This document shows positions 3,101 through 64,000 of a stretch of 64,000 nucleotides of DNA, in pieces. The first letter of the stretch is position 1. Every line of letters begins with the position of its first letter. The stretch lies in contig NC_043007.1 of NCBI RefSeq assembly GCF_006345805.1, positions 36,704,001 to 36,768,000 of the forward strand, given 5' to 3'. A model generated the notes under the pieces. That model saw nothing but the letters and a program-made list of their open reading frames with translations. It was not told the origin of the DNA and did not search any database. Position numbers and translations under genes: made by a program. The stretch comes from Octopus sinensis. Lineage: Eukaryota.

Positions 3101-3103
3101 GTC

Positions 3104-3154
<51 letters not shown>

Positions 3155-3186
3155 CATTATTATTATTATGATAATTATTATTATTG

Positions 3187-4024
3187 TTAAGTCATCAGTG
3201 GCATGCTGATGGAGACCTTGATAGACTTCGACATGATATTCTTTCTGCTCAGTGGTCAGCACACAGGGGACAAACTTGGCAGAGACATGCCGCATGTTCA
3301 ATTGAGACAGGCCAAAAAACATCAGCAATGTCATTGATTGTCCTCCAACAATTCTCACACACAAGCTGATGAATTTTTTCCACATTTCAGGAGGTGATAC
3401 ACATGGCAGGCCTTCCAGATTGCTCATTGTCTTCCAAGGACAGTCTTTCACTTTTGAAGCGCTCGCGTCACTTGAAACATTGCGAATGACCCATTGCCTC
3501 GTCACCGTAAGCTTGCCAAAGCATCCTCAATGTCTCTGAAGCAGCCTTCCCAAGTTTAACCCTTTAGCATTCAGATTAATCTGTCAAATGTAAAAACCTG
3601 TTTAATTACATTTTTTTAAATTAATTGTACATCATCTTGTAACTCTGAGATTTTGATGATGCCCCTGTTTATTTTTAGAACGACTTTGTAGGGTAGGTGT
3701 GAGAGGTCAGAGCTGGCTGGTTTGAGCATAAAACAGGAAGACAATTTTGGCCTGATATGGCCAGTTTAAACACTAATGGGTTAACACAAAATTTCACGTT
3801 GGTTCTTTGTTCCAACTTCCTGACCGTGACAAAATTGCAGACTACAGCATACGCATGATCATAAAAACACAAATTTCACAACTTCTGAAGTAAACATAGC
3901 AAATGTCACTCGACACACCACCTTATAAAAGTCCCTATTAGCTTTCACTGCACATGCAACCATATAGTGCCATCTGTTGGCATGCTATAGAACTAGTCCT
4001 GGGACTTTTTGGTACCACCTCATA
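3187..4024 (-). mobile_element. Mariner element 5' half, interrupted by a TTAA-specific MITE
   Basis: 5' TIR tatgaggtggtaccaaaaagt at 4024. The reading LEQRTNVKFCV|KLGKAASETLRMLWQAYGDEAM...RHVSAKFVP rejoins exactly when 3560-3784 is removed. Confidence 0.88.
3556..3784. mobile_element. piggyBac-like MITE (221 bp) with TTAA target-site duplication
   Basis: TTAA|CCCTTTAGCATT ... AACACTAATGGG|TTAA. Related fragments lie near 31930, 44800-45000 and 54470-54690. Confidence 0.85.
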
Positions 4025-6534: not shown

Positions 6535-6929
6535 CTAAATCCAAATATACACAGCTTTATACTTCAAAAGGAAGTAAGCAATATCAGAATTCAAGAGTTG
6601 ATATGGTTTGTATATTGTGTCACAATTTGTCTGGTAACAGGTCATGCATTAAAGCATACCATAACATGTGTGTTCTTCTTCTTCATCGTCATTGTTGTCA
6701 TTGCAATTGTCGTCATCATCATTGCACCATGCTTCCACAAGTCAGGCAAGAGTATGCTGGAGTAAAGTTTTCCACAGCTAGATGCCCTTCTTGCTATCAA
6801 CCTCCATCTATTTCTAACTGATGTAATAACCTTCCAGTGTGGGCATGTTCACCTGGAGAAGCGGAAATGAACAATACTGATAATAGCCTTTTGTTTAGAA
6901 AAAATATACGTCAAGATATATATATATTT

Positions 6930-7084
6930 ATATCAAGGGCATTACTATACATAAATGCCTCATGCTAGGAGGGACTCTTGAAGCTAAAACTACCATAATA
7001 AATAGACACATTTATTATGGTAGTTTTGACTTTAAGAGTCCCTCCTAGAATGAGGCATTTATGTATAGTAATGCCCTTAATATA
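6930..7084. mobile_element. Near-perfect palindromic element beside (TA)n
   Basis: Arms of ~70 bp (aagggcattactatac...ataataaat and its reverse complement) around a 6-nt loop agacac. Confidence 0.8.
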
Positions 7085-7199
7085 AATAAATATATTTAAG
7101 AAGAATAATTGATGGATTTTTCCCTTATGAGGTTTTTCACGCTAACTATTTGATAAATTCTTATAAAGATTTTATCCTTAATTTCAATTATACATACAT

Positions 7200-7261: not shown

Positions 7262-7439
7262 TTATATCAAGTGGCCAGCATGGAAAAAATAACCTTCAAA
7301 GGTAATAATTATTAAAATTATAAATTAGGGTATCCTGCTACTATTTTCAGCATGGTGGTATCTCGTAGATACCCTAATTTATAATTTTAATAATTATTAC
7401 CTTTGAAGGTTATTTTTTCCATGCTGGCCACTTGATAAA
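7262..7439. mobile_element. Perfect-armed palindromic element between (TA)n tracts
   Basis: atcaagtggccagc...tagggtatc and gataccctaa...ccacttgat flank a 33-nt loop. Confidence 0.8.
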
Positions 7440-7474
7440 ATCGTTATTTTATTTTTAATTAAAAAATCTTATCC

Positions 7475-8049: not shown

Positions 8050-9270
8050 TACGAGGGGTGTTCATTAAAGATTTTCCCTAACTCACTTATTGCAGGAAAC
8101 AGCCTGTACAGGTATAATTATACATGTCTCAATGTCACATTGTAAATTGTAGCTTTCCATTAGTATTCATTTGTTTTTTACGGCTGCTGAAGTGGACAAG
8201 GTGTTATAATGGAAGCAGTTGAATACAGATCAGTGATCAGGTTCCTATACATGTAGGTTGTACACCAAAAGAGATTTTCGATGAGATGAAAGAAGTTTAT
8301 GGTGATGATGCACCATCATACAATGTAGTCAAGCACTGGCATCGCCAGTTAAAATATGGTTGGACATTGGTGGAAACTGCTCCTATTTCTGGATGACCAC
8401 ATTCCGCCATTGATGACAACACCATCCATAAAGTGGAAGACACCGTTCTGGAGGATTGCTGCATATCTATTTGGCAACTAGCCCAAGAAGTGAAGCTAAG
8501 TATAGGGTCCATGGAAAAATTATTCGCAACCATTTGCACATGCAGAAGTTGTCCATACAATAGATTCCTCGGATGCTCACACTTTTCAGAAGCAGGAATG
8601 AGTCCATTGCTCTCAGACTCTTTTGGCAATGTGCCAAGAAGATGAAGAGGACTTTTTCAGCAGACTTATCACACAGGATGAAACATGGGTCCTTCGCTAT
8701 GATCCTGGGTAATGAAAGCTTGGTAACTCACCACCTCCAAAGAAGGCTCGTACCCAACCTTCAGCAGGCAAGGTGATGCTCACGGTCTTTTGGGACCAGC
8801 ACGGAGTAGTAATGATGGATCTTCTGGCAAAGGGCACCACAATTAACAGAGTATATTATGCTTCTCTGCTGCAGAAATTGCAGATGCCATCAAAGTGGAG
8901 ACACATAGCATGTTGACCAAAGGAGTCTGCCTCCTCCAAGATAACACCTCGGTTTACAATGCGCATGTTGCCCAGATGAAAGCACACTCCTGTGGCTACG
9001 AAATCCTCCCTCATCCATCCTACTCTCTTGACCTCAAACCATCTGACTTCCACCTCTTTCCAACCATGAAGTTGTTTTTGAAAAGGAAGCACTTTTTGGA
9101 TGATGATGAACTTATATCTGAGGTAAAGTCTTGGCTTCAGATGCAACCTACCAACTTCTACAGAAGAGATCTTTACAGCTGCATAAAGCAATGGGAGAAG
9201 TGTGTTACCATTGGTGGTGACAGTGTAGAGAAGGACCAATAATTGTGCTAAGTTTTGTTAATCCCAGTCT
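8050..9270 (+). mobile_element. Mariner element, near full-length transposase pseudogene
   Basis: 5' TIR tacgaggggtgttc. Translates to EYRSVIRFL, TQDETWV, LLQDN and HPSYSLDLKPSDFHLF, with many stops and frameshifts. No 3' TIR found. Confidence 0.9.
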
Positions 9271-16695: not shown

Positions 16696-19199
16696 TATAA
16701 ATCCTTTCTTGTTTTAAAACTAGGCCACCAAAATATTAGGTGTGGGGAAGTTGATTACATCGACCTCAGTACTTAATAGATACTTGTTTCATTGATAATG
16801 AAAAGACAAATGACAAAGTCAGCCTCAGTGGAATTTGAACTCAAAACATGAAGCCAGAAGAAATGCTGCTAAGCATTTTGTCCAATGCAGTAACAATTCT
16901 GCCAGCTCACTGCTCTTATAATAATAATCATGCATGTGTTTGTGTGCAAAAGAATAACATTAATGTTTATAAACAGGGTGTTTAGCACTCCTAGTTTCAC
17001 ATCCTACAGTCTGCAACATTATTTCTTATTAGGAAAATATGCTTATTATTTGCTTTGTCAATTTATAATGTTAATTATTCGTTTCTAAAAACAATACAAA
17101 CCAAAAGCAATTTGTGCAAATGAGAATCCCAATCCTTATTTGAAATAAATGCCTTCATAGAATATATGTATAATTCTGCAAATAGCTATAGAATGCTGAA
17201 GTCAATGATGGATTAACGAAATAACAGTTGTCATCTTGCCATCATAATCATAATGATGATAAGATGACAGCTGTTATTTCATTACTGCATTTCTCTTGAA
17301 ATACTCTGCCTTCATTTCAATTATTTTTTAAAAATAATTTTGTCATTATTAAACAGGTGAAAGACTCATAGACTAACAGGAAATTTTGATGGAAGGTTTA
17401 ACTTTTTAGCTTCCAGATTACTTTGTCAATGATGTAGTGAGTTCGAATCCCAGACTGGGCTGTGTGTTGTGTTCTTCAGCAAGACACTTTATTTCATGTT
17501 GTGCCAGTTCACTCATCTGTAGAAATGAGTTGCAGCATCACTGGTGCCAAGCTGTATTGGCCTTTGCCTTTTTCTAGGTGCAATTGAAGGGTGGAGCACA
17601 CAGGTCAGGGGTTAGCGGATAGCAATGATACAGTGAGACAGGGCCAAGAGGACAGGATTGGGGAGCAGGAGGTAAGCATAGTACATAAAGTGGAAATGTG
17701 AGGAAGAGAAGAGATGTAGAGATGTAGTTTGGTTTGTTGTGGTGTGTGAGAAGTTTTCTTGTTAAGCACTTCAAGAACTCAGTTTTACTGACGTGGGCAG
17801 ATCTTCTCAAGAATTTCATATCGCCAGACATCTCAGTCCATTATCAGGGTTGATAAAATAGATACCAGTCAAGTACTGGGGTCAATGTAATTAAGTTTCC
17901 CTTTCTCTTAAAATTGCTGGTCTTGTGCAAAATCAGAAACAATCATCATCATCATCATCATCATCACTATAACTATCATGGTTATACACTCTTTTGAAGT
18001 TGTTTGGCTCATGTGTGTAGTGAATGTGTAATGATCAAAAGTTTTCCTGCCATGACCATCCCATCAATTTGTTCTTCAAGCATAGTTTATTTAGAACTAC
18101 TTTGTCAAATATGTTCACATTTTATTTAATATGCAAGAATATGTAATCTAAGGAAGAACTAGTTGCTGCTGTTATTAGCAGGTTAGGTAACCTTATCAAG
18201 TTCCCTTGTTGACGTAGGTTGAAATGATCTGCTGCACAGAACACTGCCATTCAATATGATCTTTTGTTATCATGTCCATGAAGTATGTCATCTTGAGACT
18301 TGACCTCACTACAGCTTCCTATATCTCCCTTAATTGCTATCTGCTCTAGATACCGCCTCCAACAACCAGTATACAGAACTTTTATTTTTAGACTTGCTCT
18401 CCTTATCCATTGTACATGTTTTTATTAGCACAATTATCTCTCATGCATAATCAGCTGATATCTGCAATGCCAACGCATTCTTCTGCCTCACCAGTACTCT
18501 ACATTTTCATAAAAACAGATGAAATTCCACCAAGCATTTTGCTGGGTTTGCTACTGATTCTACTAGCTCACTGTTGACACTTCATGTAAATATTAGTTTC
18601 ATATTTTGGTACAAGGCCAGAAATTTTGGGGGAGGGGATAAGTCAATTGAATGAACTCCAGTGTTCATTTAATTGACCCCAAAAGGATCAAAGGTAAAGT
18701 CGACCACAGCAGCATTTGAACCCAGGACATAAAGATGGACAAAATGCCACTAAGCATTTTGCCTTATTTTTCTTAAATGCAAAATTGACCTCGGTGGAAT
18801 TTAAACTTAGAATGTAAAGAGAGATGAAATGCTGCTAAACATTTTGCCTGGCATTCTAACGATTCTTCCAGCTTGCCACTAAAGTTGACTTTGGCAGAAT
18901 TAGAACTCAGAATGTAAAGACGGACAAAATATTGCCAATCACTTTGCTTGGCATGCCAACAATTCTGCCAGCTTACCACCTACATTTCATGTAAATATTA
19001 ACACACATGGTTCCAGGTTCAGTCCCACAGCATGACACCTTGGGCAAGTGTCTTCTACTATAGCCTTGGGCCGACCAAAGCCTTGCGAGTGGATTTGGTA
19101 GACGGAAACTGAAAGAATCCCGTTGTATATATATAAGAGATAAGTACAGACAAAATACCAAAAGAAGATAATTCACTCGTCAGTTGTTTATGCCTTTAA

Positions 19200-22277: not shown

Positions 22278-22709
22278 GCACACAAATACATCATTGAATA
22301 ACAAGGAAAGGAATTACACATTACATAACCAACTTCATTAACTTACAACTGTTTCAGCAGTGCACTCAGAGCTGAGTGCTTGTGCAACATTTTACTGCTT
22401 CCTTGGAGCCATTAAAATGAAGTGTTTGTTTATTTGGGAAAGCACTGATGTACATTTAAATACAGGTACATTCCATATGAATGGCCATGGGAAAGCTATG
22501 ACATGTTGCACAAGCACTTACCTCTGATAGCATTGCTTTTTATAGCAGAAACAGCTGTCAGCTAATGTAGTTGATTGCACATTTCTTGTTCCCTTGTCAT
22601 TCAATAATTCTGTACTTGTCTAATGCTTATTTTAAAGCGTATATATATTGAGTTCTATAACAACTGGTTATTAGTATCGCTATTTCTAAGTGGAAACATT
22701 GTGTGTGTA

Positions 22710-28298: not shown

Positions 28299-28640
28299 GT
28301 GAAGATGCATGGCTCAGTGGTTAGAGCATCAGGCTCACAATCATAAGATAGTGAGTTCAATTCTTGGACCAGGCTGTGTGTTGTATTCTTGGGCAAGACA
28401 CTTTATTTCATGTTGCTCCAGCTCACTCAGCTGTAGAAATAAGTTGCTATGTCACTGGTGCGAAGCTGTATTGGCCTTTGCCTTTCCCTTGGATAACATC
28501 AGTGGTATGGAGAGGAGAGGCTGGTATGCATGGCAACTGCTGGTCTTCCATAAAACAACCTTCCCTGGATTTGTGCCTTGAAGGATAACTTTCTAGGTAC
28601 ACTCCCATGTTCATTCATGACCAAAGGGGGTCTTTACACC
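28298..28640 (+). mobile_element. tRNA-derived SINE (family E) with a CORE-like segment
   Basis: tggctcagtggttagagc...gagttcaatt...ttgggcaagacact...ctcagctgtagaaat. Partial copies near 17440, 56480 (-) and 63550. Confidence 0.7.
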
Positions 28641-40038: not shown

Positions 40039-40535
40039 CAGTGTTTCTGAACCTTTTTACACTTGTGTAATCCTTAAAATAAATTACATCTCAAGGATCC
40101 CTTGCACAAAAAATATTATTTAACCATAATCTTCCTCATATCATTTCACCGTAGTTCACATGGTAAATATCATATATATATATGATATTTACCATGTGAA
40201 CTATGGTGAAAAGACATATGAGGAAGATTATGGTAAATAATATATTTTGTGCAGGGGGTTCTTGAGACGTAATCATCATCATCATCATCATCATCATTTA
40301 GCGTCCGTTTTCCATGCTAGCATGGGTTGGACGGTTCTACTGGGGTCTGTGAAGCCAGAAGGCTTCATCAGGCCCAGTCAAATCTGGCAGTGTTTCTACG
40401 GCTGGATGCCCTTCCTAACGCCAACCACTCCGTGAGTGTAGTGGGTGCTTTTTACGTGCCACCCGCACTGGTGCCAGACAGAGCTGGCAAACGGCCACGA
40501 ACGGATGGTGCTTTTTATGTGCCACCGGCAGATAT

Positions 40536-41233: not shown

Positions 41234-41633
41234 GGCATAGGAGTGGCTGTGTGGTAAGTAGCTTGCTTATGAACCACATGGTTCCGGGTTCAGTCCCACT
41301 GCATGGCACCTTGGGCAAGTGTCTTCTACTGTAGCCTTGGGCTGACCAAAGCCTACTGAGTGGATTGGGTAGACGGAAACTAAAAGAAGCCCGTCGAATA
41401 TATGTATATATATATATATGTATGTGTGTGTATGTGTATATATTTGTGTGTCTGTGTCTGTCCCCCCCAAGATCACTTGGTGTGTTTATGTCCCTGTAAC
41501 TTAGCGGTTTGGCAAAAGAGACCAATAGAATAAGTACTAGGCTTACAAAGAATAAATCCTGGGGGCAATTTGCTCGACTAAAGGCGGTGCTCCAGCATGG
41601 CCACAGTCAAATGATTGAAACAAGTAAAAGAGT
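41234..41633 (+). mobile_element. SINE family B, well preserved
   Basis: Full head, internal TA/TG microsatellite and tail. Confidence 0.85.
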
Positions 41634-42881
41634 CATTAAAACAAATAATGATGATGTACAGATCTTACAGGACACACACACACAAGTATATATTTACACA
41701 CATAGAAAACGACAAATTTTCAGTTAAAAAAGAATTTAACCCACAACCACTAGTTTAGACCTTAATCCAATGAAGGAGCTTCTATATGATCACTTGATCA
41801 GGGAGAAACAGCAGCCAAATCTCCCTCAAATAACTCATCACCATCTTAGGAAAAGGCACTTTTGTTTGTTCCTTCTCGAGCCTTGCCTGGCTCATAAGGG
41901 CCGGTTTCCCGGTTTCTTGGCATATAGGTTCCCCACCTGGACAGGACACCAGTCCATCGCAGGTGAGCTGCAAGATGCAAGAGGAAAGAGTGAGAGAAAG
42001 TTGTGGTGGAAGAGGCAGCAGAAGTTTCGCCATTACCTTCTGCTGGAGCCACATGGAGCTTAGGTGTTTCGCTCATAAACACATACATCATCCAATCTGA
42101 GATTCGAACCCGCGATCCCTCGACCGCGAGTCCGTTGCTCTAACCACTAGGCCATGTGCCTCCACAAAATGCACTTTTAGATAATGTCGTCCCAGTTTCC
42201 CCTGTATGTAGGACAAAGATGGGATGGTCTCGACTGGAATGCATTTGCTTATAAGTCTGTTCAATCAGGGTTGACCTGGAGCTAAACAACAATAATAACA
42301 AATAAATTATGACTTAATTAGTGAGGGAGCTAGAAATAGTAGACAAATCTCCTTTAAATCATACCCTACTCTGTTAAAAAACAGGACACATTGGATAATA
42401 AGCTCTCAAACTCACAGTATCTGAGAAAAAATAAAGATGGTCATGGTGAGATTGCCTTTGATCAGGAATAATTTAGAGTTACATAACAACTTCATAGGGT
42501 TTATATACTGAGCCAATGAGTGAATAAACAAACCAATGGATAAACCAGCCAATGTGCCAGCCATGCAACAATGTTGTTGCTTTATCATAATTGAATCATA
42601 ACTCCAGTCATGATTGTTCTGTCTTACTATCAGGCTAAGTAGTAAGAAAGGTGCAGGTGTGGTTGTGTGGTAAGAAGCTTGCTTCCCAATTACATGGTTC
42701 TGAGTTCAACCTCACTGCATGGCACCTTGGGCTGATCAAAGCCTTGTAAGTGGATTTGGTAGATAGAAAGTGAAAGAAGACTGTCACATTATATATATAT
42801 ATATATAATATATATAATTCTTTTATTCTCTAACTCATTTCAGCCATGTGGTTGTAGTCATGCTGGAGCACCACTGTGGAG

Positions 42882-43250: not shown

Positions 43251-45317
43251 TTTAAAATTAAGATTTTTTTTTTTATTAATTCTATGTTTTAATTTTTATT
43301 TTAGAAATTTACATGATGTGGTGGGGGAGTTGATAAGTTACCAATGGTTCCATGAAGCGGGTTAATGTCATAAGAAGTTTGTTGAGCTTTGGTGCAGTCT
43401 CCTTCCTTGTGCCATATTAAACTGGTACTCCATTGGTTACGATGACAAGAGGTCCAGTTGATCTGATCGATGGAATAGTCTGCTTCAGAAATGAACATGC
43501 AAGTGGCTGAGTACTTCACAGACACGCATACCCTTAGCATAGTTCTCAGGAAGATTCAGCATGACACAGAATGTGATATGGCTGGCCCCCCGAAATACAG
43601 GTACTACTCGTTTTTGCCAGCTGCGTGGACTGGAGGGACATGAAATAAAGTGTCTTGCTCAAGGATACAATGCACCACCAGGAATTGAACTCACAACTCT
43701 ATGATTGTGAGCTGAATACCCTAACCACTAAGCCATGAGCCTTCACTCCTTGTGCCATATAAATAAGAGCGGACAGGTGGAAAACGAGGTCAAAGTTGAA
43801 CCATCCAAGAGGAAAGGACAGAAGAAAAGAAAGAAAGGAAAAAAAAGAAAAAGGAGAATTAAGGGAAAGAATGAAAGTTATGGAAAAGAGAGAAATCCCA
43901 TCGTTCACCCAGGAGGAAGTGCATGTGATGGGGGGACTGTATTGTTTTTAAAATTTTGGTGCTTGTTCTGGCTAGGGAAAGTGACCTTTAAAAAATGCTA
44001 CATAAAGAAGAGTAAAGTGCTAGAATTTTGGTTGATATATCACATTCGAGCGCAGACACAGAGTTTGGTAATATAATGGAAATGGGAGACGGAAAAAAAA
44101 TACGGCTTTTTCTGTTAGTGAAGCGGTTGTTATTGTCATGGATTATTGTTATCTAATTGAAGGTCATTCAGGCTCAATCCAGCAGACTAATGAACAAAGA
44201 CATTCCAGTCATGACAAACATGCATTCATTTACTTTAAAACAGAGAGTATCTAAACTAACAACATTCAATAAAGCCATCATCATCATCATCGTTTAACGT
44301 CCATTCTCCATGCTAGCATGGGTTGGATGGTTCAACTGGGGTCTGTGAAGCTGGAAGGCTTCATCAGGCCATCAGATCTGGCAGTGTTTCTACGGCTGGA
44401 TGCCCTTCCTAACGCCAACCACTCCGTGAGTGTAGTGGGTGCTTTTTACGTGCCACCCGCACAGGTGCCAGACAGAGCTGGCAAACGGCCACAAACGGAT
44501 GGTGCTTTTACGTGCCACCGACACAGAGGCTAGATGGGGCAGCGCCGGCAACGACCACGATCGGATAGTTCGCTTAACCACAGCTGCAATTCCCACTGAT
44601 GTTGATCGACCTCAATTTGGTTCTGCTTTCTGATATATGAATTGATTTGGTTTGATTTTGATTTTGACTGTTCTCACTGTTTTTAAAATACAGATAACAT
44701 GATGTATTTTGAGGGAGGTTTGACTGTTATTCCTAGCACTGAGTAACCCATGTTGAGCTTCCATTCTTGATACATGATAAAAGCAACAGTAATAGTAGTC
44801 ATTGTTGTAATGCTTATTTATTCACATTGTTTTGAATTAATAGTGCATTATGTCGTGGCTTTGAAATTTTGATGATGTGGATGTTTACATTTAGAATGAC
44901 ATTGTAGGATGGGTGTGAGAGGCCAGATCCAGCTGGTTTGAACATAAAACAAATAGAATATCTTGACTTGATATGGCAGGTTTAAAAGCTAAAGGGTTAA
45001 ACAGACAGAATATAAGGGCCAGATATGGATAGTTTAAATGCTGAAGGATTAATAAAAATTAAGATGGTTGCCAACTTTTAAATTCGTTCAATACCATAAT
45101 TAAAAAAAAATGCAAATTCTATTGTTGACTTCACATTTATAAAAAAAATGATGGGAAAAAATTTCTTTTATATTTTGTGGGAGGTGGGACCTGATATTTG
45201 TCTATTGGAGAAGTGCTGGTTTAGAATAAAAGCAACACTTCAATAAAGTAATAAATCTTTCTCACACCTCTTTCTTTTTCTCTTTCATCTATTTCTTTCA
45301 TTGTCTTAATTTTAAAG

Positions 45318-45352: not shown

Positions 45353-47352
45353 GTAAATTTACTCCAACCTAAGTTCCAAATAAGAAACTGGTTTATATCA
45401 CAATAATATTCTGTTTTTAATCTGATGCCCAGACACCAAACCATCCACCCATCAGCCAGGACAGCTGAGACAATATAGGGTAGATTGTTTTTGCTCCAGC
45501 ATCTTGTGTTAGTGGCACATAAAAATGCACCCCATGCTAGTGCCATGTAAAAAGCACCCATGCTGGTGCCACATAAAATGACCTAGTGTCATGTGAGAAG
45601 TACCCGGGTTGGTGTCATGTAAAAAGTCACCCAGAACACTCTGTAAAGTGGTAGGCATTAGGGAGAGCATCCTGCCAAAGAAACCATGCCAAAACAGACA
45701 GCTGGAGCTTGGTGCAGCTCCTGTCAAACTGTTCAACCCATGCCAGCATGGAAAATGGATGTTAAATGATGATGATGATTTAAGAGTAAGTTACCCAATG
45801 ATTTTAAACTTTAGACCAAATTGATAGAATGTAACATTAAATATGAATGCATCTTTGAGCAAACCTGAGCAGGGATGGGGATTTTAAGGACTATGACTTA
45901 GCCTTAGTCTCATGATAAATAAATGAATCGTCCTCTGAATAAGATTGTATACTGGCTTAGGTTAGCCTACACATCCACATAAGACAATTGATAACTCAGC
46001 ATGCACACACATATATACCTGTTCAGTTAGCATCTGTTTTTCCATGCTAGCATGGGCTAGATGAATACATCTTGAGGCATTGTTATTTATAGATGTGGAT
46101 GTGTGATCCAGATGTTTGCTTCCCAACCAAATAGTTTTTAGTTCATTCCCACAGCATGGCACCTTGGGCTAGTGTCTTCCACAATAGCCCCATGCTGATC
46201 AAAGCCTAGTGAGTAGATTTGGAGGGAAACAGCTGAAAGCAGCCCATCATACGTTTGTGTGTGTGTGTGTGTTTGCCTGCATGTTAGTGTCTCCTTGTTT
46301 TGATATCATCTGGCACTTGTAAAAACGAGCATCACCATCATACAAATGGTGTCTTTCATTTCCAATATTCAGTAAAAACATGTCTGCTGAAAGGGAAATG
46401 TTACTTCGCTTGTAAAACAAAATAGGGTTGGCAACAGGAAGAGCATCCAGCTGTAGAAAATTTACTTCAATAACTCCTGTCTGATTTGTGCAAGTATAGA
46501 AAAGTGGATGTTAAAATAATGATGAAGATGATGATGATGATGAGGAGGAGGAGGAGGAAGAGAAGAAGAAGAGGAGGAGGAGGAAGAAAAAGAAGAAGAT
46601 GATGAGGAGGAGGAAGAAGAGGAGATTATTTCCTTATCACTAAGCTTTAATTGCTTTTGAAGCAATTGTTTTTTTTTTTTAAATTCTATTCATCTTTGAA
46701 AGAGCAGAGTTACAGGAGAATGATTTGTCAGCAGGAAATGTCAACAAACATCACCATTTTTGTTCTTCTCAATTATTTTCATATGCGGACAGTTGCAAAC
46801 ACTCACACACATACACATGCACTCACACACATACACCAGGTTTCCATAGAGTTTCTAAGTATTCTGTTTGCAAATGTCATGCAGTGAGATAGAACTCAGG
46901 ACCATGTGGTAACCAATGCAAACACTATATCCGCACATCCATGCTGTATCCATGTGAGCATTTTGTATGTCTTTTAATCTTTTTTTTTTTTACTTTTTTA
47001 CTTGTTTCAGTGGCCATGCTGGAGCACCATCTTTAGTCGAACAAATCAACCCCAGGACTTATTCTTTGTAAGTTACGTACTTATTCTATCGGTCTCTTTT
47101 GCTGAACCGCTAAGTTACAGGGACGTAAACACACCGACATCAGTTGTCAAGTGATGGTGGGGTGACAAACACAGACACACACACATATATATACGACAGG
47201 CTTATTTCAGTTTCTGTCTACCAAATCCACTTTATGAGTTTGGTTGGCTCGACTCTATAGTAGAAGACACTTGTCCAAGGTGCCATACAGTGGGACTGAA
47301 CCCAGAACCATGTGGTTGGTAAGAAAGCTACTCACCACAAAGCCACTTGTTG

Positions 47353-47391
<39 letters not shown>

Positions 47392-47465
47392 TATATATAT
47401 AATATATTTATTTGCTTTCGGTGCGAATGGTTTTGTTATATAGCCCTGTATTTTACAATCCTGTA

Positions 47466-47778
47466 AATAATATAATAGTGGTATTTTTATATAAGCTTAA
47501 AGCTTATGGTGATCACTGTGCAATGCCTAAGGAAAACAGTCTAATAATGGGGCATATAAGCCCTCAACAGAGAAAAGAAGGCTTTCCTATCTGCATGGGA
47601 CTCAAACCCACATTCCTTTGTTAACGTGACTAAGTGTGTTACTTTTACACCAGCAAATAGGAAAGCCTTTTTCTTTCTGTCAAGGGCTTATATACCCCTT
47701 TATTAGACTATTTTCCTTAGTCACTGCATGGTGATTGCCATAAGCTTTAAGCTTATATAAAAATACTATTATTATTAT
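47466..47778. mobile_element. (TA)n-flanked hairpin element with ~125-bp arms and a tRNA-like apex
   Basis: 47466-47594 is an imperfect reverse complement of 47653-47778. Confidence 0.8.
47588..47659 (-). other. 72-nt tRNA-like cloverleaf (pseudo-tRNA, loop triplet CGT)
   Basis: TATTTGC-TG-GTGT-AAAAGTA-ACAC-A-CTTAGT-CACGTTA-ACAAAG-GAAT-GTGGG-TTTGAGT-CCCAT-GCAGATA: 7-bp acceptor stem, 4-bp D stem, anticodon arm with one mismatch, 5-bp T stem, B-box GGTTTGAGTCC. Confidence 0.65.
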
Positions 47779-47795
47779 TATATATTTATTTATAC

Positions 47796-47828
<33 letters not shown>

Positions 47829-47892
47829 TACATATATATACACACACATCTATATACACACATATATGTATATATATGTGTGTGTGTGTATG

Positions 47893-47931
<39 letters not shown>

Positions 47932-48107
47932 ATAAATATTAGGGAATAAATCCAAATTTACAGGGAAAAAAATCAGATTTAGGATTAAATCCAATTTTAT
48001 AGTAAAATATTATAAAATATTATTAGAGACAAAACCACTATTTTGCAAAACAAACAAGGAAAGACTTAATCAATACATAAAATTTTAATAAATAGTCAAA
48101 AAATCCG

Positions 48108-48150
48108 CCACTATAATCGTTTCTTGTCTTGATCGACAATCTTCAGGTGG
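48108..48150 (-). ncRNA. Minimal type I hammerhead ribozyme, variant copy (G16.2 to A)
   Basis: CCAC-CUGAAGA-UUGUC-GAUCAA-GACAA-GAAA-C-GAUU-A-UA-GUGG. Confidence 0.65.
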
Positions 48151-51100
48151 ACTTCCAATCTAAAAAATCAAAATTTTAAAATATAAAAATAATAATTTTA
48201 AATAATTAAAGTATAAATGAAAAAATATAAGTATATAATCCATATATAACCTATATATAATCCATATCGAAAATATAGACAAATTACCACGAATTCCCTA
48301 AAAAAAACCATGATAAAACAAAACTCTTAAAAACATATAACGATAAAAACTCCCTTTGCTAAACTCTAAAACAAACCTATATAGTAATCCCCCTAACCTA
48401 AACATTCACACACAAATACACACACGTAAACCACAGTCCCACAACTTATACACATACCTATACTAACTTATAAACCTCAATATACACCAAAACCCACTCC
48501 CTCCCCACACAGACAAATTAACACATACATCCCAAAACCTAAATAACAAACCCATATACACATTCACACACAAACACACACACACACGCAAAACATGCAC
48601 ACACAACAGATACATATACTCCCTCACATATACGCATATACATACTCACTAAACTCGACATATACAACAATACTTACACACCCACAAAAATCATTAAATA
48701 CATTTATGAGCTTTAACTCACCTTAGCAGCTCTAACAAACAACTTGCAGTAACCCAATCCCATTCACTATGCCTACCTCACTACTACACTATTCCATTCA
48801 CAATTCCAAGCAACGCTAGTCCACCACCCGGTTATTCACGTGGCAAAACGAACACCACTCAAAAATTATGAATGAAACAATGTAAAAAAATAACCAACAT
48901 CGAAAATAGACAAATTACCACGAATTACCTAAAAAAAACCATGATAAACCAAAACTCATAAAAGCATATAACGATAAAATCTCCCTTTGCTAAACCCTAT
49001 AACAAACTTATATAGCAATCCCCATAACCTAAACATTCACACACAAATACACACACGTAAACCACAGACCCAAGACTTATATGTATACAATTATACACAC
49101 TAGAATAATACATAACTAACCCAAATATACAGAACATACTAATAATCACCAACTAACCACCATCACAAATGAAACCCACACCCATACAATGACAAAACTC
49201 CCCCCCATACCCTATTTACACCCTCATAGTAATCCCAATATATTCATCCATACATGGACGCAAGTGCGTGAAGTACATGCACATAATTAGTGCGTACAAC
49301 CCCTAATACACACTAATATATACGTATCTAGCTCGACCTCCACAGCGATACGTTTACACCCACTCACACCCAGATGGGTGAATTGCACAACCAGTGAATG
49401 CTCACACACACGGGCGCGATTACATTGTTGCATATATCGAGCCTAAATAGTATGCATATGTACATGTGAGGGGTACACGCAAATGAAGTGAGCGTGTACC
49501 CCCTGCATTTATACCCGTGCGTGAATATACACATGGAGACTACCACACAGGTACAAATTGTTTAGAAATGGGAGCCCCATCACTACACTTAATGTATACT
49601 CTCACCCATCCGCACGGATGTGTAAGTGTATCTCCGGTGTATATGTTGAGGCTTATATGTAGCGTTGTGGAAGGGAACGTCGTTTAAATGTGAATGAATG
49701 GGTGGAGTTGGGAATTGTAACCAGGTGGTGGACTAGCGTTGCTTGGAATTGTGAATGGATTAGTGTGGTAGTGAGGTATGCATCGAGAATAGTTATGGGT
49801 TACTGTAAGTTGTTTGTTAGAGCTGCTAGGGTGAGCTAAAGCTCATAAATGTATATAATGATTTTCATGGTAGTTTTTAAAGAATCCATTCATAATAAAT
49901 TTTTTTAAGTAGCGTTGGTTTGCTACGTGGATATAGTTTTTAGTTCCATTTATTATATTTCTCCATTCATATTTGAATGACGTTTACTTTCTATGGCGCG
50001 TATTCTTTTTTTTTTTTTTTTTTTTACATAAGTTATTTCTATGGTAACGTAATTTTTGTTTGGTTTTTTAACGGCTAAGAATTTAATTTCACTTCATAAT
50101 ATGTAACTGAATTGTAAGTATGTATTTGATTTATCCTTATGTCATATTGTTATTTTTGATATTCTGGTTAATTACGATGTATTTAATGTTGTTTTCATAG
50201 GAGTGTTTATGTATATGAGATTGGTTGTGAGTTTTTAGTTGTATAATTATTTATTTATCTGTATGAGTGTGGGTGTGTAAATATTGTTGTATATATCGAG
50301 TTTAGTGAGTATGTATATGCGTATATGTGAGGGAGTATATGTATCTGTTGTGTGTGTGTGTTTTGCGTGTGTGTGTGTTTGTGTGTGAATGTGTATTTGG
50401 GTTTGTTATTTAGGTTTTGGGATGTATGTGTTAATTTGTCTGTGTGGGAGGGAGTGGGTTTTGGTGTATTTTGAGGTTTATAAGTTAGTATAGGTTTGTG
50501 TATAAGTCTTGGGTCTGTGGTTTACGTGTGTGTATTTGTGTGTGAATGTTTAGGTTATGGGGATTGCTATATAAGTTTGTTATAGGGTTTAGCAAAGGGA
50601 GATTTTATCGTTATATGCTTTTATGAGTTTTGGTTTATCATGGTTTTTTTTAGGTAATTCGTGGTAATTTGTCTATTTTCGATGTTGGTTATTTTTTTAC
50701 ATTGTTTCATTCATAATTTTTGAGTGGTGTTCGTTTTGCCACGTGAATAACCGGGTGGTGGACTAGCGTTGCTTGGAATTGTGAATGGAATAGTGTAGTA
50801 GTGAGGTAGGCATAGTGAATGGGATTGGGTTACTGCAAGTTGTTTGTTAGAGCTGCTAAGGTGAGTTAAAGCTCATAAATGTATTTAATGATTTTTGTGG
50901 GTGTGTAAGTATTGTTGTATATGTCGAGTTTAGTGAGTATGTATATGCGTATATGTGAGGGAGTATATGTATCTGTTGTGTGTGCGTGTTTTGCGTGTGT
51001 GTGTGTGTTTGTGTGTGAATGTGTATATGGGTTTGTTATTTAGGTTTTGGGATGTATGTGTTAATTTGTCTGTGTGGGGAGGGAGTGGGTTTTGGTGTAT

Positions 51101-51431
51101 ATTGAGGTTTATAAGTTAGTATAGGTATGTGTATAAGTTGTGGGACTGTGGTTTACGTGTGTGTATTTGTGTGTGAATGTTTAGGTTAGGGGGATTACTA
51201 TATAGGTTTGTTTTAGAGTTTAGCAAAGGGAGTTTTTATCGTTATATGTTTTTAAGAGTTTTGTTTTATCATGGTTTTTTTTAGGGAATTCGTGGTAATT
51301 TGTCTATATTTTCGATATGGATTATATATAGGTTATATATGGATTATATACTTATATTTTTTCATTTATACTTTAATTATTTAAAATTATTATTTTTATA
51401 TTTTAAAATTTTGATTTTTTAGATTGGAAGT

Positions 51432-51474
51432 CCACCTGAAGATTGTCGATCAAGACAAGAAACGATTGTAGTGG
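51432..51474 (+). ncRNA. Minimal type I hammerhead ribozyme, apparently intact
   Basis: CCAC-CUGAAGA-UUGUC-GAUCAA-GACAA-GAAA-C-GAUU-G-UA-GUGG: full core, 4-bp stem I, 5-bp stem II, very short stem III, GUA cleavage after 51470. The U10.1-A11.1 pair is atypical. Confidence 0.78.
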
Positions 51475-51561
51475 CGGTTTTTTTGACTATTTATTAAAAT
51501 TTTATGTATTGATTAAGTCTTTCCTTGTTTGTTTTGCAAAATAGTGGTTTTGTCTCTAATA

Positions 51562-51599
<38 letters not shown>

Positions 51600-52246
51600 C
51601 ACAAATATACATACATATATATACACACACACATATATATATATACACACACAAATATACATACATATATATATACACACAAATATACATACATACATAT
51701 ACATATACATATATATGAGGGATTTAGTTCACTGGTGGAATAGGTATGCTGTGTAAGTGCTATAATTGGTCATCTGTTATGTTCCAAGTTCACAGCTGAG
51801 GCTGGAGCTAGGGATCCCTAGTAGGCTTCTGAGTCAGCAGGTATATATTAAAGGAAAAGGAAAACAAAATATATATTCTGTTGTGTCGGGGGAGAGTCAT
51901 TCTCTTTTAACACACTCACCACTGGTTCAGTTCCACTGCATGGCACCTTGGGCAAGTGTCTCCTATTATAGCTTCAGGCCAATGGAAGATTTACAAATAG
52001 ATTTTAGTTTATGTATTTATGTCTTTGTGTCTGTGTTTGTCTCCCACCACCATCGCTTGACAACAGATTTTGGTGTGTTTAGTAAATGAGCCTGACAGAA
52101 TAAGTACTAGGCTTACAAAGAATAAGTCCTGAGGTCAATTTCTTCAACTAAAAAAACCCTTTAAGGCAGTACTCCAGCATGGCCACGGTCAAATGAATGA
52201 AACAAATAAAAGAGTATACATATGTAAATATATATATATATATATG

Positions 52247-52685: not shown

Positions 52686-52781
52686 ATAGGCAAGGAAAAA
52701 TTATAAAAAGGCAGAATGCTAAATTGAAGGTAATTTTAATGAATTTAGCATTCTGCCTTTTTATAATTTTTCCTTGCCTAT
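52686..52781. mobile_element. Perfect-armed 96-bp palindromic element beside (TA)n
   Basis: ataggcaaggaaaaattataaaaaggcagaatgctaaatt and its reverse complement around a 16-nt loop. Confidence 0.8.
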
Positions 52782-53544: not shown

Positions 53545-53930
53545 ACTTGTTTCAGTTATTTGACTGTGGCTATGCTGGAGTACCGCGTTTAGTTGAGCAA
53601 ATCTACCCCAGGACTTATTCTTTGCAAGCCAAGTACTTATTCTATCGGTCTCTTTTTGCCGAACCGCTAAGTTACAGGGACGCCAACACACCAGCATCGG
53701 TTGTCAAGCGATATTGGGAGACTAACACAGACACACAAACATACACACACACACACACAAACATATGACGGGCTTCTTTCAGTTTCCGTCTACCAAATCC
53801 ACTTACAAGGCTTTGGTCGGCCCGAAGCTATAGTAGAAGACACTTGCCCAAGGTGTCACGCAGTGGGACTGAACCCGGAACCATGTGGTTGATAAGCAAG
53901 CTACTTACCACACAACCACTCCTACACCTT
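53545..53930 (-). mobile_element. SINE family B
   Basis: Reverse complement of the consensus, well preserved. Confidence 0.85.
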
Positions 53931-56404: not shown

Positions 56405-57586
56405 CTTAAAAAAGAAAAAAGGATGAACACACTGGATGATATAATCCTAGTTGTTGTGTTTTTGTGACTCCCTTCGGTCATGAATGACCATGGGATTGCA
56501 CCTAGAAAGTTACCCTCTGAGGCACAAGTCTGGGCAAGGTTGTTTACGGAAGACCAGCAATTGCCCATACATACCAGCCTCCCCTCTTCACACCACCGAT
56601 GTTATCCAAGGGAAAGGCAAAGGCCGATACAGCTTGGCATCAGTGACATTGCAGCTCATTTATTAACGTGCAAGTGGCTGAGCACTCCACAGACACGTGT
56701 ACTCTTAACGTAGTTCTCGGGGAGATCCAGCGTGACACAGTGTGACAAGGCTGGCCCTTTGAAATACAGATACAACAGAAATAGGAAGAAAGAGTAAGAA
56801 AAGTTGTGGTGAAAGAGTACAGCAGGGTTCACCCCCCCCCCCCCCCTGCTGGAGCCTTGCGGAGCTTTAGGTATTTTTGCTCAATAAACACTCACAATGC
56901 CCGGTCTGGGAATCGAAACCACGATCCTACGACCACAAGTCCACTGCCCTAACCACTGGGCCATTGCGCCTCCACCATAGTCCTAGTTACACTAACTGTA
57001 ACCACCCAGTAATTTTACTTTTTTAAATATGGAATAGAATCAGCAGGAATAGCTTTGTTCATTGATTTGCTTGATCATGCTGACCCGGGGCTACATAACA
57101 ACAAGAATATATATTTGTTTAGCCAACAAGGGAGTCTCTACGCAAGTACTTGACTTGCTGGAAATAGCTGTTAAATCTCTCTCATATCACATTCCATTGT
57201 GTCATGTTTGTTTTTGTCACTGTCTTCTATATTCACCCATCATTCTGAGCAGCTTTTTGTTGTTGACGCTACCAAAATGAACAATATTATCATTAAAGGA
57301 ATGAAATTATAATGATTACCAGACGACAACTGATGAGGAAAGAGGTGTCTTGCAGTAGAGGAAATATATGGCTACCTCAGTTGGAGAGGGAGAAAGAAAG
57401 AGAGAGGAGAGAAAATGAATGTGATCCTGGTTGACAGCATGAAAAAGTACACCAGAGCTAAAAATTTGAAAATATTCTGATGATTTTTTCAAAAAAATTC
57501 CAGTGGTTGTAAAGAATTTAACAAGATCTGTTAGCAGAAGAGTGTCAACTGTAAACTGACTTGCTAAAAGCTGCCATGGACTGACA

Positions 57587-58104: not shown

Positions 58105-59582
58105 AATATATATATATCTCTTTTACTTGTTTTAGTCATGTGACTGTGGCCATGCTGGAGTACAGCCTTTAGTCGAGCAAATGGACCCCAGGACTTATTC
58201 TGTGGAAGCCTAGTACTTATTCTATCAGTCTCTTTTGCTGAACTGCTAAGTTACGGGGATGTAAACACACCAGCATCGGTTGTCAAGCGATGTTGGGGGG
58301 TACAAAGACACACAAACATATACACACACATACATATATATATATGTATATATACAACGGGCTTCTTTCAGTTTTCACCTACCAAATCTACTCACAAGGT
58401 GTTGGTCGGCCTGAGGATATAGTAGAAGGCATTTGCCAAAGGTACCACGCACTGGGGATGAACCCGGAATGATGTGGTTGGTAAGCATGCTACTTACCAC
58501 ACAGCCACTCCTGCACCTATATATATATATATATATATATATATTCTTTTACATGTTTCAGTCATTTAGACTGTGGCCATGCTGGAGCACTATTTTAAAG
58601 GGTTTTAGTTGAAGAAATCGACCCAGGACTTTTTCTTTGTAAGCCTAGTACTTATTTTATCAGCTTCTTTTGCTGCGCCTCTAACTTACAGAGACAAACA
58701 AACCAGCATCAGTTGTCAAGCGGTGGTAGGGGGACAAGCACAGATACATGTGCACACACACACATATATATATATGTGCGCCAGCCCACAGTCAAACCCA
58801 TGCTAGCATGGAAAGCGGACGTTAAACAACGACGATGATGATGATATACAACAGGCTTCTTCCAGTTTCCGCCTACCAAATTCACACACAAGGCTTTGGT
58901 TGGCCTGTGGCTGTAGTAGAAGACACTAGCCCAAGGTGTTATGCAGTGGGACTGAACCTGGAACCAGTTGTTGGGAAGCAATCTTCTTACCACACAGCCA
59001 TGCCTGTGCATATATATCTAGGGTCATCACATTGGGGTGTAGATTTAATCCAATAACCACTTTAACACAATATCTGGTCCCTTGGGTGGTAGGCATTCAC
59101 TTGGTACATTATAAAAAAAAAAGGAAAGAAAAAGAAAATCATGAAAAATGCCTTGTAACATACAAAGGGATGTTATTGACTTACTCTCTTTTACTTGTTT
59201 CAGTCATTTGACTGCGGCCATGCTGGAGCACCGCCTTTAGTCAAGCAAATCGACCTCGGGACTTATTCTTTGTAAGCCCAGTACTTATTCTATTGATCTC
59301 TTTTGCCAAACCGCTAAGTGACGGGGATGTAAACACACCAGCATCGGTTGTCAAGCAATGCTAGAGGGACAAACACAGACAAACAAACATATACACATAT
59401 ATATATATACATATATACGACAGGCTTCTTTCAGTTTCCGTCTACCAAATCCACTCACAAGGCTTTGGTCGGCCCGAGGCTATAGCAGAAGACACTTGCC
59501 CAAGATGCCACGCAGTGGGACTGAACCCGATACCATGTGGTTGGTTAGCAAGCTACTTACCACACAGCCACTCCTGCACCTG
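58105..59582 (-). mobile_element. Three consecutive SINE family B copies in the same orientation
   Basis: Copies at ~58105-58520, ~58545-59010 (with a family C fragment inside) and ~59180-59582. Confidence 0.85.
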
Positions 59583-62500: not shown

Positions 62501-62925
62501 CATCCCGCTGGCTAAGCGAGCAGATCAACAGAAGAAAGAATGAGATAAAGTTGTGGCGAAAGAGCACAGCAGGGATCGCCTCCATCCCCTGCCAGAGCCT
62601 CGTAGAGCTTTAGGTGTTTTCGGTCAATAAACACTCACTACGCCCAGTCTGGGAATCGAAACCGCGATCCTACAACCGTGAGTCCGCTGCCCTAACCACT
62701 GGGCCATTGCGCCTTTACATATATATATATATGTGTGCATATACGATGGGCTTCTTTTCAGTTTACATCCATCAAATCCACTCACAAGGCTTTTGTTGGC
62801 CCAAGGCTATAGTGGAATACACTTGCCTATGGTGCCACGCAATACGACTGAACCCAGAAACATGTGGTTGGAAAGCAAGCTTCTTAACACACAGCCATGC
62901 CTATGTATGTATGTATGTATGTATG

Positions 62926-63370: not shown

Positions 63371-64000
63371 GTATGCATGTATGTATTTATTGATTCCCTC
63401 CACCTCCCATGGAATGGACTGGAGCAACATGAAATAAAATGTCTTGCTCAATGGCACAATGCACAGCTGGAAATTGAACTCATAACCTCACAATCATGAG
63501 CCAAATATATATACATACACACAAACATATGCATCTAAGTATGTATACTCTTGAGCAAGACACTTTATTTCATGTTACTCCAGTTCACTTAGCTGTAGAA
63601 ATGAGGTTAGCATGCATGGATGACTGCTGGTCTTTCATAAACAACTTTGCCTGGACCTGTGCTTCTGTGGGTAACTCTACTCTCTAGGTGCAATCCCATG
63701 GTCATTCATGAGCAACGGGGGTCTTTATGCTTTTTACATCTACTCTTGGTTTTGTATGTTTATATTTATACATATCTATGCAGGTGTGTGAATGCATGAA
63801 ATTCCAAGTATGAGTAGATATGCTTGTATATTCATGTACACACTCTATTTACATGTATGTCTACATATTTGCAGGTACTTTCATTTATGTGTGAGTATGC
63901 ATGCATACATATTTTTTATTTATTATCAGTCAAATTATTTATTTATTTATTTATTTATTGAATGGTGTAACATGCCTGGCATTTGGAAAATATGCGTTAT

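What the first reader, a model, noticed from the sequence alone, without database searches (positions are those of the whole stretch)
47466..47778. A tRNA cloverleaf mounted on a ~125-bp inverted-repeat stalk
Seen: the apex of this TA-flanked hairpin (47588-47659, minus strand) folds as a 72-nt tRNA with acceptor, D, anticodon and T arms and an internal B-box. Its acceptor stem is the innermost 7 bp of the long arms. This is neither a normal SINE (tRNA at the 5' head, tail at 3') nor a plain MITE. Inference: a non-autonomous element with a central Pol III promoter, or an RNase P/Z-cleavable tRNA mimic that would release or mark a long dsRNA. It could be a tRNA gene captured by a TA-targeting fold-back element. 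The A-box lacks the usual GG and position 33 is A, so it is not a decoding tRNA.
Basis: partly seen in the sequence, partly recalled or inferred. Interest (0 to 1): 0.75.

Follow-up and report, generated by a model that had tools for sequence, protein, structure and literature searches.

The report
Decayed tRNA relic inside DNA palindrome
A 300-base DNA palindrome in a repeat-rich animal genome really does carry a worn-out tRNA-like sequence exactly at its tip, but this copy looks like a decaying relic rather than a working RNA gene, and no second copy could be reached to show whether it is mobile.

Summary
Arms 47472-47594 and 47653-47775 are 123 nt and 86% complementary, and the 58-nt loop is exactly tRNA positions 8-65. 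The Rfam tRNA model scores 47587-47659 (minus strand) at 34.7 bits, above its gathering score of 29. The loop alone still scores 18.2 bits. ARAGORN calls it at 95% of its threshold, the only such call in 64 kb, and at most 1 of 5,000 loop shuffles per shuffle type does as well.

It is not a working tRNA. G19, U33 and a purine at 37 are missing, C56 is lost, and the cloverleaf is 5.2 kcal/mol less stable than the best RNA fold.

The functional reading is not supported:
- The arm mismatches are 15 transitions and 2 transversions, with 8 G·U pairs on one strand and 7 on the other.
- Three ancestral CpGs decayed independently in both arms.
- A TTTT run lies 12 nt after the tRNA end, so Pol III started at the tRNA could not copy the stalk.

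Best reading: an old, inert palindromic DNA element, foldback- or MITE-like, formed by inverted copying of one flank of a tRNA-derived gene, with the fold-back seeded at the acceptor stem. No second copy was reachable, so family status and mobility remain untested.

The parts
47472..47594 (.). Left arm of the palindrome. On the minus strand it is the 3' side of the tRNA-like core. Its innermost 7 nt (47588-47594) are the 3' half of the acceptor stem.
47653..47775 (.). Right arm of the palindrome. Its innermost 7 nt (47653-47659) are the 5' half of the acceptor stem.
47587..47659 (-). tRNA-derived pseudogene (anticodon position reads CGT, 47626-47624). D stem 47650-47647 / 47639-47636. Anticodon stem 47633-47629 / 47621-47617 with one A·A mismatch. 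T stem 47611-47607 / 47599-47595. T loop TTTGAGT 47606-47600.
   Evidence: Rfam RF00005 34.7 bits against gathering 29. 18.2 bits without the acceptor stem. ARAGORN at 95% of threshold. Nulls.
47598..47608 (-). B-box-like GGTTTGAGTCC, 10 of 11 to the consensus. The one deviation (T at 47604, tRNA position 56) is what a CG-to-TG decay would give.
   Evidence: Changing that single base to C makes ARAGORN call a tRNA at its default threshold.
47573..47576 (-). TTTT run 12-15 nt after the 3' end of the tRNA-like sequence, a likely Pol III stop. A second TTTT lies at 47533-47536.
   Evidence: read from the sequence; the terminator role is inferred from general knowledge of Pol III
47688..47694 (-). 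TATATAA at -35..-29 from tRNA position 1. Its mirror image sits in the other arm, so it carries little weight.
   Evidence: read from the sequence
47461..47471 (.). Possible outer extension of the symmetry (AATAATAGTGG against AATAATAGT, 2-nt indel). Low-complexity A/T sequence, so the true end and any target duplication cannot be read.
47776..47781 (.). Matching outer extension on the right, running straight into (ATT)n/(TA)n.

Best explanation
This is an old, non-coding DNA palindrome of foldback or MITE-like form, built symmetrically around a tRNA-derived sequence that is now a pseudogene.

Shown:
- The loop of the palindrome is exactly tRNA nucleotides 8-65.
- The acceptor stem is the first 7 bp of the stalk.
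- The arms have drifted apart neutrally to 86% identity.

Inferred: the palindrome arose when a DNA strand being copied through a tRNA(-derived) gene folded back on the gene's own acceptor-stem inverted repeat. It then copied about 116-125 nt of one flank in reverse. This gives flank, tRNA and reversed flank with no spacer.

The present copy is inert. It has a damaged B-box, no decoding features, Pol III stop signals inside the stalk, and no sign of selection on RNA pairing.

Whether the structure afterwards spread as a mobile family is not tested. My guess is about even odds. The window holds several other small palindromes, two of which share a terminal motif, so palindromic mobile elements probably exist in this genome.
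For: The tRNA likeness is real and does not depend on the stalk:
- 34.7 bits, above the gathering score of 29.
- 18.2 bits for the loop alone.
- The only ARAGORN call in 64 kb at 90-95% of threshold.
- 0 and 1 of 5,000 shuffles, and 4 of 63,651 genomic 58-mers, do as well.
- Negative controls.

Exact register: the inner ends of the repeat (47594 / 47653) coincide with tRNA positions 66 and 7.

Neutral decay of the arms:
- 17 mismatches in 123 positions, 15 of them transitions.
- 8 would be G·U on the plus strand and 7 on the minus strand.
- Three adjacent double mismatches (47510/11, 47517/18, 47565/66) are TG in one arm and CA in the other, meaning an ancestral CG decayed independently in each arm.
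- CpG observed/expected for the window is 0.36.
- The hairpin energy is equal on the two strands.

Decay of the core:
- One CpG-type reversal (T56 to C) restores a default ARAGORN call.
- The cloverleaf is -9.8 against a best fold of -15.0 kcal/mol.

No coding capacity or protein relatives.

Context: five other small palindromes and a 1.2-kb-armed inverted repeat next door show that such structures are common at this locus.
Against: - Only one copy is available, so neither the origin nor the ancestral tRNA can be checked.
- Inverted copying over about 120 nt by strand fold-back is long for known template-switch events.
- A multi-copy mobile family would explain the size and the A/T-rich ends equally well.
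- The tRNA hit is lost under Infernal's default filters, and 16.5 of its 34.7 bits come from the stalk-provided acceptor stem.
Confidence: 0.6

Rival explanations
1. It is one copy of a mobile MITE or foldback family in which the tRNA-like core is a working part. The core could be a TFIIIC/Pol III binding site, or a processing signal carried by every copy. The family would be moved by a TA-targeting transposase.
For: - Small size, long terminal inverted repeats and A/T-rich ends.
- Mariner-type transposase remnants lie in the window at 3062-3505 and 8895-9242.
- Other palindromic elements sit nearby. Two of them share the terminal 11-mer TTTATATCAAG, which resembles TTTATATAAG at the ends of this element.
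Against: - No second copy in the remaining 63.6 kb, even with nhmmer --max.
- None in metagenome, genome or viral collections, although these collections do not hold animal genomes.
- No target duplication can be read.
- The mariner remnants share no sequence with the arms.
- This copy shows only neutral decay.
Confidence: 0.2
2. It is a retroposition accident. The cDNA of a tRNA-headed SINE or of a read-through pre-tRNA snapped back on its acceptor stem and primed its own second strand, giving tRNA plus body plus inverted body.
For: - It gives the same exact register of tRNA and arms.
- tRNA-derived SINEs are very abundant here: about 15 copies of one family, and 5 B-box-like sites against 1.08 expected.
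- An A/T-rich, tail-like sequence lies at the outer ends.
Against: - The supposed body has two TTTT runs in the sense orientation, present in both arms, which a Pol III-transcribed SINE should not tolerate.
- The arms match none of the SINE families in the window.
- The SINE head next door does not score as a tRNA at all.
Confidence: 0.08
3. It is a hairpin RNA gene (an siRNA, miRNA or ADAR substrate) read through by Pol II. RNase P and RNase Z would cut off the tRNA-like tip and open the double-stranded RNA.
For: - A long, nearly continuous stem on either strand.
- Weak, structure-only hits to long miRNA precursor models.
- tRNA-like processing signals are known elsewhere, such as MALAT1 mascRNA and the tRNA-miRNA units of a murine gammaherpesvirus (from my own knowledge).
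Against: - All miRNA hits are far below their gathering scores (57 against 160, 36 against 84).
- No strand bias in wobble pairs, and double CpG decays break pairing.
- The cloverleaf is not the favoured RNA fold.
- Leader and trailer would be fully paired, which is expected to hinder RNase P and Z (inference).
Confidence: 0.07
4. It is a chance resemblance: an ordinary hairpin loop that happens to look like a tRNA.
For: - The tRNA hit is missed by default ARAGORN and by filtered Rfam scans.
- The anticodon arm aligns only locally.
- Invariant bases are missing.
Against: - The shuffle and genomic-58-mer nulls.
- The loop alone hits tRNA and no other of the 4227 families.
- Negative controls.
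- A single CpG reversal gives a default tRNA call.
Confidence: 0.03

Closest known systems
Palindromic MITEs of the Tc1/mariner (Stowaway-like) kind
   Same: Short, non-coding, with A/T-rich ends. The whole element folds into one hairpin. Mariner remnants and other small palindromes occur in the same window.
   Different: - The arms are 123 nt, not about 30 nt.
- No readable TA duplication, no second copy and no matching autonomous element were found.
- The core is a tRNA-derived sequence in exact register with the arms. Three word and phrase searches of the open literature surfaced no such case; of those results I opened only PMC3845634, which was not relevant.
tRNA-derived SINEs and tRNA pseudogenes
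   Same: A tRNA-related sequence with a near-consensus B-box that has lost decoding features. The genome is full of tRNA-derived SINE heads.
   Different: - The tRNA part is central, not at the 5' end.
- It is flanked on both sides by the same sequence in opposite orientation.
- TTTT runs lie in the would-be body.
- It is not similar to the SINE families in the window.
- It scores much higher on the tRNA model than the local SINE head, which gave no hit.
Quasi-palindrome or template-switch (fold-back) mutations, and palindromic AT-rich repeats
   Same: A short pre-existing inverted repeat, here the acceptor stem, at the centre of a longer palindrome. The setting is A/T-rich and microsatellite-rich. 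The structure is single-copy as far as can be seen.
   Different: Known template-switch events are mostly tens of bases long, whereas about 120 nt would have been copied here. The mechanism is inferred, not shown.
Foldback (FB) transposons
   Same: Very long inverted repeats with a short middle. A 3.9-kb structure with 1.2-kb arms made of sub-repeats lies right next door.
   Different: The arms of this element contain no tandem sub-repeats and share no sequence with the neighbouring large repeat.
tRNA-like processing modules (MALAT1 mascRNA; gammaherpesvirus tRNA-pre-miRNA units)
   Same: A tRNA mimic physically joined to another structured RNA.
   Different: In those cases the tRNA-like part sits at an end of the transcript, next to the other RNA, not at the apex of a long hairpin. 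Nothing here indicates transcription or processing.

Membership tests
tRNA (Rfam RF00005) | Covariance-model score at or above the gathering score | tested here: met
   34.7 bits against 29 at 47587-47659 on the minus strand. The hit is seen only when the stretch searched is short enough for lax filters, and is lost.
tRNA (functional, decoding) | Invariant bases G18-G19, U33, a purine at 37 and T54-psi55-C56, with the cloverleaf as the stable fold | tested here: not met
   The D loop is AAAAGTA. Position 33 is A, position 37 is T and position 56 is T. One A·A mismatch sits in the anticodon stem. Two bases lie between the D and anticodon stems. The cloverleaf is -9.8 against a best fold of -15.0 kcal/mol.
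tRNA-derived SINE | tRNA-related head at the 5' end, followed by a body and a 3' tail | tested here: not met
   The tRNA-like part is central, with an inverted copy of the 'body' upstream.
tRNA-derived SINE | Body free of Pol III terminators, so that the whole element can be transcribed | tested here: not met
   TTTT at +12..+15 and at +52..+55 in the sense orientation. Both arms have T runs there.
tRNA-derived SINE | Many dispersed copies | not testable with these tools
   No second copy in the window. The source genome is not in any collection on hand.
MITE (Tc1/mariner type) | Terminal inverted repeats, small size, no coding capacity | tested here: met
   123-nt arms in an element of about 310 bp. 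The open frames have no relatives.
MITE (Tc1/mariner type) | TA target-site duplication | tested here: inconclusive
   The ends lie in A/T-only low-complexity sequence, and the symmetry simply continues outward.
MITE (Tc1/mariner type) | Multi-copy family, with an autonomous partner sharing the ends | not testable with these tools
   Single copy in 64 kb. The mariner remnants in the window share no sequence with the arms.
Foldback transposon | Long inverted repeats built from tandem sub-repeats | tested here: not met
   Tandem Repeats Finder reports no array inside 47466-47778.
miRNA / hairpin-RNA precursor | Match to a known family, or pairing preserved on the transcribed strand | tested here: not met
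   The best miRNA-model hits are far below gathering (57.3 against 160, 36 against 84, 32 against 70). 8 G·U against 7, and equal energies on the two strands.

The most novel reading that the evidence does not exclude
This genome (probably a cephalopod) hosts a family of palindromic DNA elements, each built around a Pol III tRNA-like unit at the hairpin tip. The acceptor stem would serve as the fold-back point that creates or regenerates the palindrome. Alternatively, the tRNA mimic would recruit TFIIIC or RNase P/Z to mark long hairpin transcripts. The copy seen here would be an old, dead member.
Probability: 0.1. Interest if true: 0.75.

Novelty: new variant of a known kind. Interest (0 to 1): 0.42.

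Why it matters
If other copies exist, this would be a type of non-autonomous element that joins the hallmark of SINEs (a tRNA-derived Pol III unit) to the hallmark of MITEs (a perfect hairpin). It would give a concrete way for a tRNA gene's own acceptor stem to seed a long palindrome.

If it is a one-off, it is still a clean natural example of a palindrome centred on a short pre-existing inverted repeat. It lies in a locus crowded with palindromes of several sizes and ages, which bears on how such unstable structures arise.

There is also a practical lesson. The tRNA match, which is above Rfam's own threshold, was invisible to default ARAGORN and to filtered Infernal scans.

Tried and rejected
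Searches for other copies all failed:
- blastn with word size 7 and nhmmer --max against the rest of the window.
- A translated arm frame, and then a six-frame concatenate of the element, against the 5.8-billion-protein collection.
- A 19-mer from the most conserved arm block against metagenome contigs. It gave 22 loci, all matching the seed only.
- A 20-mer against bacterial and archaeal genomes (2 chance hits, judged from the host records, not checked by alignment) and against viral contigs (0 hits).
- Exact look-ups of 12 window ORFs and of the best Octopus bimaculoides mariner relative, to fetch same-species DNA. None is on record.
- A sequence-string search of papers.

Literature searches for a tRNA-cored MITE surfaced none in the listed results. 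I opened two of the listed papers and searched them for key terms. Neither the O. vulgaris repeat paper nor the silkworm MITE paper contains a relevant case.

Rejected ideas:
- The apex as a copy of one of the window's SINE heads. There is no similarity beyond generic tRNA features.
- The hairpin as part of the neighbouring 3.9-kb inverted structure. There is no counterpart at the other end and no shared sequence.
- A mitochondrial tRNA origin. I judged the GGG/CCC T arm with its TTYGAGT-type loop to be nuclear-type, but this rests on my own knowledge and was not tested.
- The bacterial promoter and terminator scan is irrelevant for a eukaryote.

A Pfam scan of 10 window ORFs gave no host gene to place the locus.

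Full report
**What is there**

The window is eukaryotic, A/T-rich (37% G+C) and strongly CpG-depleted, with observed/expected 0.36. It is crowded with microsatellites. It holds mariner-type transposase remnants and about 15 copies of one SINE family. The best protein relative of one mariner remnant is an Octopus bimaculoides SETMAR-like protein at 71% identity. Together with my recollection of the SINE, this suggests a cephalopod, but that is not proven.

At the reported place the repeat finder gives arms 47472-47594 and 47653-47775. They are 123 nt long and 86% complementary, with 58 nt between them. This is the longest hairpin in the window. As single-stranded DNA it folds at -97 kcal/mol, z = -18. 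With a 2-nt indel the symmetry continues to about 47461/47781. Beyond that, both sides are A/T-only low-complexity sequence. The 'TA flanks' therefore say nothing, and no target duplication can be read.

**Is the apex really tRNA-like?**

The first tests were negative. Default ARAGORN finds no tRNA in the window. Rfam at gathering thresholds finds nothing. A 451-nt Rfam scan at E up to 10 lists only structure-driven miRNA-precursor hits, all far below their thresholds.

Those negatives come from the filters. When only 47580-47666 is scanned, RF00005 (tRNA) scores 34.7 bits, above its gathering score of 29. The E-value is 2.2e-6, the match covers model positions 1-71, and it lies at 47587-47659 on the minus strand. 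At 171 nt the hit is again dropped.

The loop alone (47595-47652, no acceptor stem) still hits tRNA and no other of the 4227 families, at 18.2 bits. The stalk therefore supplies about 16.5 bits and the D and T arms the rest.

ARAGORN calls the site as tRNA-Thr(cgt) at 95% and at 90% of its threshold. At 90% it is the only call in 64 kb. At 80% there are 34 calls, among them several SINE heads.

Nulls:
- With the stalk kept and the 58-nt loop shuffled, 0 of 5,000 mononucleotide and 1 of 5,000 dinucleotide shuffles give any call at 95%.
- When every real 58-mer of the window is placed in the same stalk, 4 of 63,651 (3 places) pass at 95%.

Controls:
- The head of the abundant SINE 250 bp away gives no tRNA hit in an 87-nt search.
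- The apex of another hairpin gives none in a 93-nt search.

I conclude that the core is derived from a tRNA or a tRNA-like gene.

**Anatomy of the core (minus strand, position 1 = 47659)**

| Part | Sequence | Note |
|---|---|---|
| Acceptor stem | TATTTGC / GCAGATA | 7 bp, one G·U |
| Positions 8-9 | U8 G9 | |
| D stem | GTGT / ACAC | |
| D loop | AAAAGTA | no GG |
| Between D and anticodon stems | two bases | normally one |
| Anticodon stem | TTAGT / ACAAA | one A·A mismatch |
| Anticodon loop | CACGTTA | 33 = A, anticodon CGT, 37 = T |
| Variable loop | GGAAT | |
| T stem | GTGGG / CCCAT | |
| T loop | TTTGAGT | |

The B-box GGTTTGAGTCC matches the consensus at 10 of 11 positions. The window holds 5 such sites against 1.08 expected, and the others lie in SINE heads.

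The one deviation, T at position 56, is what a CG-to-TG decay of the canonical TTCGA would give. Changing that single base makes ARAGORN call a tRNA at its default threshold.

As RNA, the cloverleaf (-9.8 kcal/mol) is 5.2 kcal/mol less stable than the best fold. This is a pseudogene-grade tRNA relic, not a decoder.

**Register**

The inner ends of the inverted repeat (47594 / 47653) are tRNA positions 66 and 7. The loop of the palindrome is therefore exactly tRNA nt 8-65, and there is no spacer on either side.

**State of the arms**

- Of 17 mismatched positions, 15 are transitions.
- On the plus strand 8 would be G·U and 7 A·C; on the minus strand the numbers are reversed. There is no preference for pairing on either RNA strand.
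- The two RNA hairpins have equal energy, -174.7 and -174.3 kcal/mol.
- Three adjacent double mismatches (47510/11, 47517/18, 47565/66) read TG in one arm and CA in the other. An ancestral CG decayed independently in both arms.

This is the signature of an originally perfect DNA palindrome decaying neutrally in a methylated genome.

**Pol III logic**

In the tRNA orientation, TTTT runs lie at +12..+15 (47576-47573) and +52..+55 (47536-47533) after the 3' end. The other arm has T5 and T4 at the mirror places.

From general knowledge of Pol III, a transcript started by the internal boxes begins at about tRNA +1 and would end at the first T run. It would include neither the 5' arm nor most of the 3' arm.

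**How it most likely arose**

The zero-spacer register is what one expects if the acceptor stem's own 7-bp inverted repeat was the point where a nascent strand folded back and copied one flank in reverse. That gives flank, tRNA and reversed flank. Capture of a tRNA gene into an existing hairpin would normally leave unpaired leader and trailer bases.

The same register would result from snap-back of a SINE or pre-tRNA cDNA. Against that:
- The T runs argue against a Pol III-transcribed body.
- The arms match none of the SINE families here.
- The apex is not closer to any local SINE head than generic tRNA features allow.

I cannot tell whether the palindrome then spread. No second copy exists in the other 63.6 kb, and every route to the source genome failed.

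For mobility: five other small palindromes occur in the window. Two of them, 6918-7095 and 7262-7440, share the 11-mer TTTATATCAAG at their left ends, and these are its only two exact occurrences in the window. The ends of this element carry the similar TTTATATAAG.

Against mobility: each of these five palindromes is single-copy in the window.

**Comparison with known kinds**

- It works like none of them cleanly.
- It meets the structural definition of a MITE (inverted ends, small, non-coding). The defining multi-copy and target-duplication features could not be tested.
- It fails two defining features of a SINE: the head is not at the 5' end, and the body is not terminator-free.
- It fails the Foldback hallmark of sub-repeated arms.
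- It passes the Rfam tRNA threshold while failing the invariant-base tests for a functional tRNA.
- Three word and phrase searches of the open literature surfaced no tRNA-cored MITE in their listed results.

**Verdict**

It is right that the core is a non-decoding tRNA relic in an unusual architecture. The Pol III, RNase P/Z and double-stranded-RNA function is not supported.
- It is a new variant of known kinds, seen as a single, old, neutrally decaying copy.
- Interest is moderate. It would rise sharply if a genome search shows a family whose consensus keeps the cloverleaf.

Noticed in passing
47859-49081 and 50501-51717: A large inverted repeat starts right next to the hairpin. Its arms are 1224 bp at 95.1% identity, about 1.4 kb apart. 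The arms contain internal direct and inverted sub-repeats (for example 48257-48450 and 48890-49081 at 90.7%). There is no ORF of 75 aa or more inside, and TA/CA microsatellites sit at both outer ends. It is either a Foldback-like non-coding element or a local inverted segmental duplication. The left copy has about 80 extra bases (47931-48011).
   Followed up: partly
6918-7095, 7262-7440, 22356-22537, 40138-40217, 52686-52781: Five more small palindromes with unrelated sequences lie in the 64 kb. Arm identity ranges from 71% to 100%. Each is single-copy in the window, and several abut (TA)n. The first two lie 170 bp apart and share the 11-mer TTTATATCAAG at their left ends, which are its only two exact occurrences in the window.
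   Followed up: partly
47100-47347 (-) and about 15 other places, e.g. 53657-53920, 59309-59572, 41242-41403: An abundant SINE family with a tRNA-like head and an internal TA/TG microsatellite. Its head gives no hit to the Rfam tRNA model in an 87-nt search, unlike the hairpin apex.
   Followed up: partly
42089-42174, 56898-56969, 62641-62712 (all -): A second family of tRNA-like SINE heads (GGCGCAATGGCCCAGTGGTTAGGGC...GGTTTCGATTCCC) with near-consensus B-boxes. They are unrelated to the hairpin apex beyond generic tRNA features.
   Followed up: partly
3062-3505 (-) and 8895-9242 (+): Remnants that look like mariner-type transposase. The second was searched, and its best relative is an Octopus bimaculoides SETMAR-like protein at 71% identity, with similar hits in tick, lizard and shrimp. 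The first was read from its translation only. Neither gave a transposase hit in my Pfam scan.
   Followed up: partly
1-415: A tandem repeat of period 184 (2.2 copies, 91% matches). The unit contains a tRNA-like stretch (GGAATTTGAACTCAGAACG) that relaxed ARAGORN calls twice.
   Followed up: no
63415-63587, 43626-43697, 28352-28425, 17459-17511: A short repeat of about 40-70 nt (TGGACTGGAGCAACATGAAATAAAATGTCTTGCTCAA) occurs at four or more places. At one of them it occurs as an inverted pair around a microsatellite.
   Followed up: no
whole window; 47587-47659: Method note. CpG observed/expected is 0.36 in the window while GpC is 1.02. A tRNA-model match above Rfam's own gathering score was invisible in scans of 171 nt or more because of the speed filters, so 'no Rfam hit' on a whole window does not exclude weak tRNA-like sequences.
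   Followed up: yes
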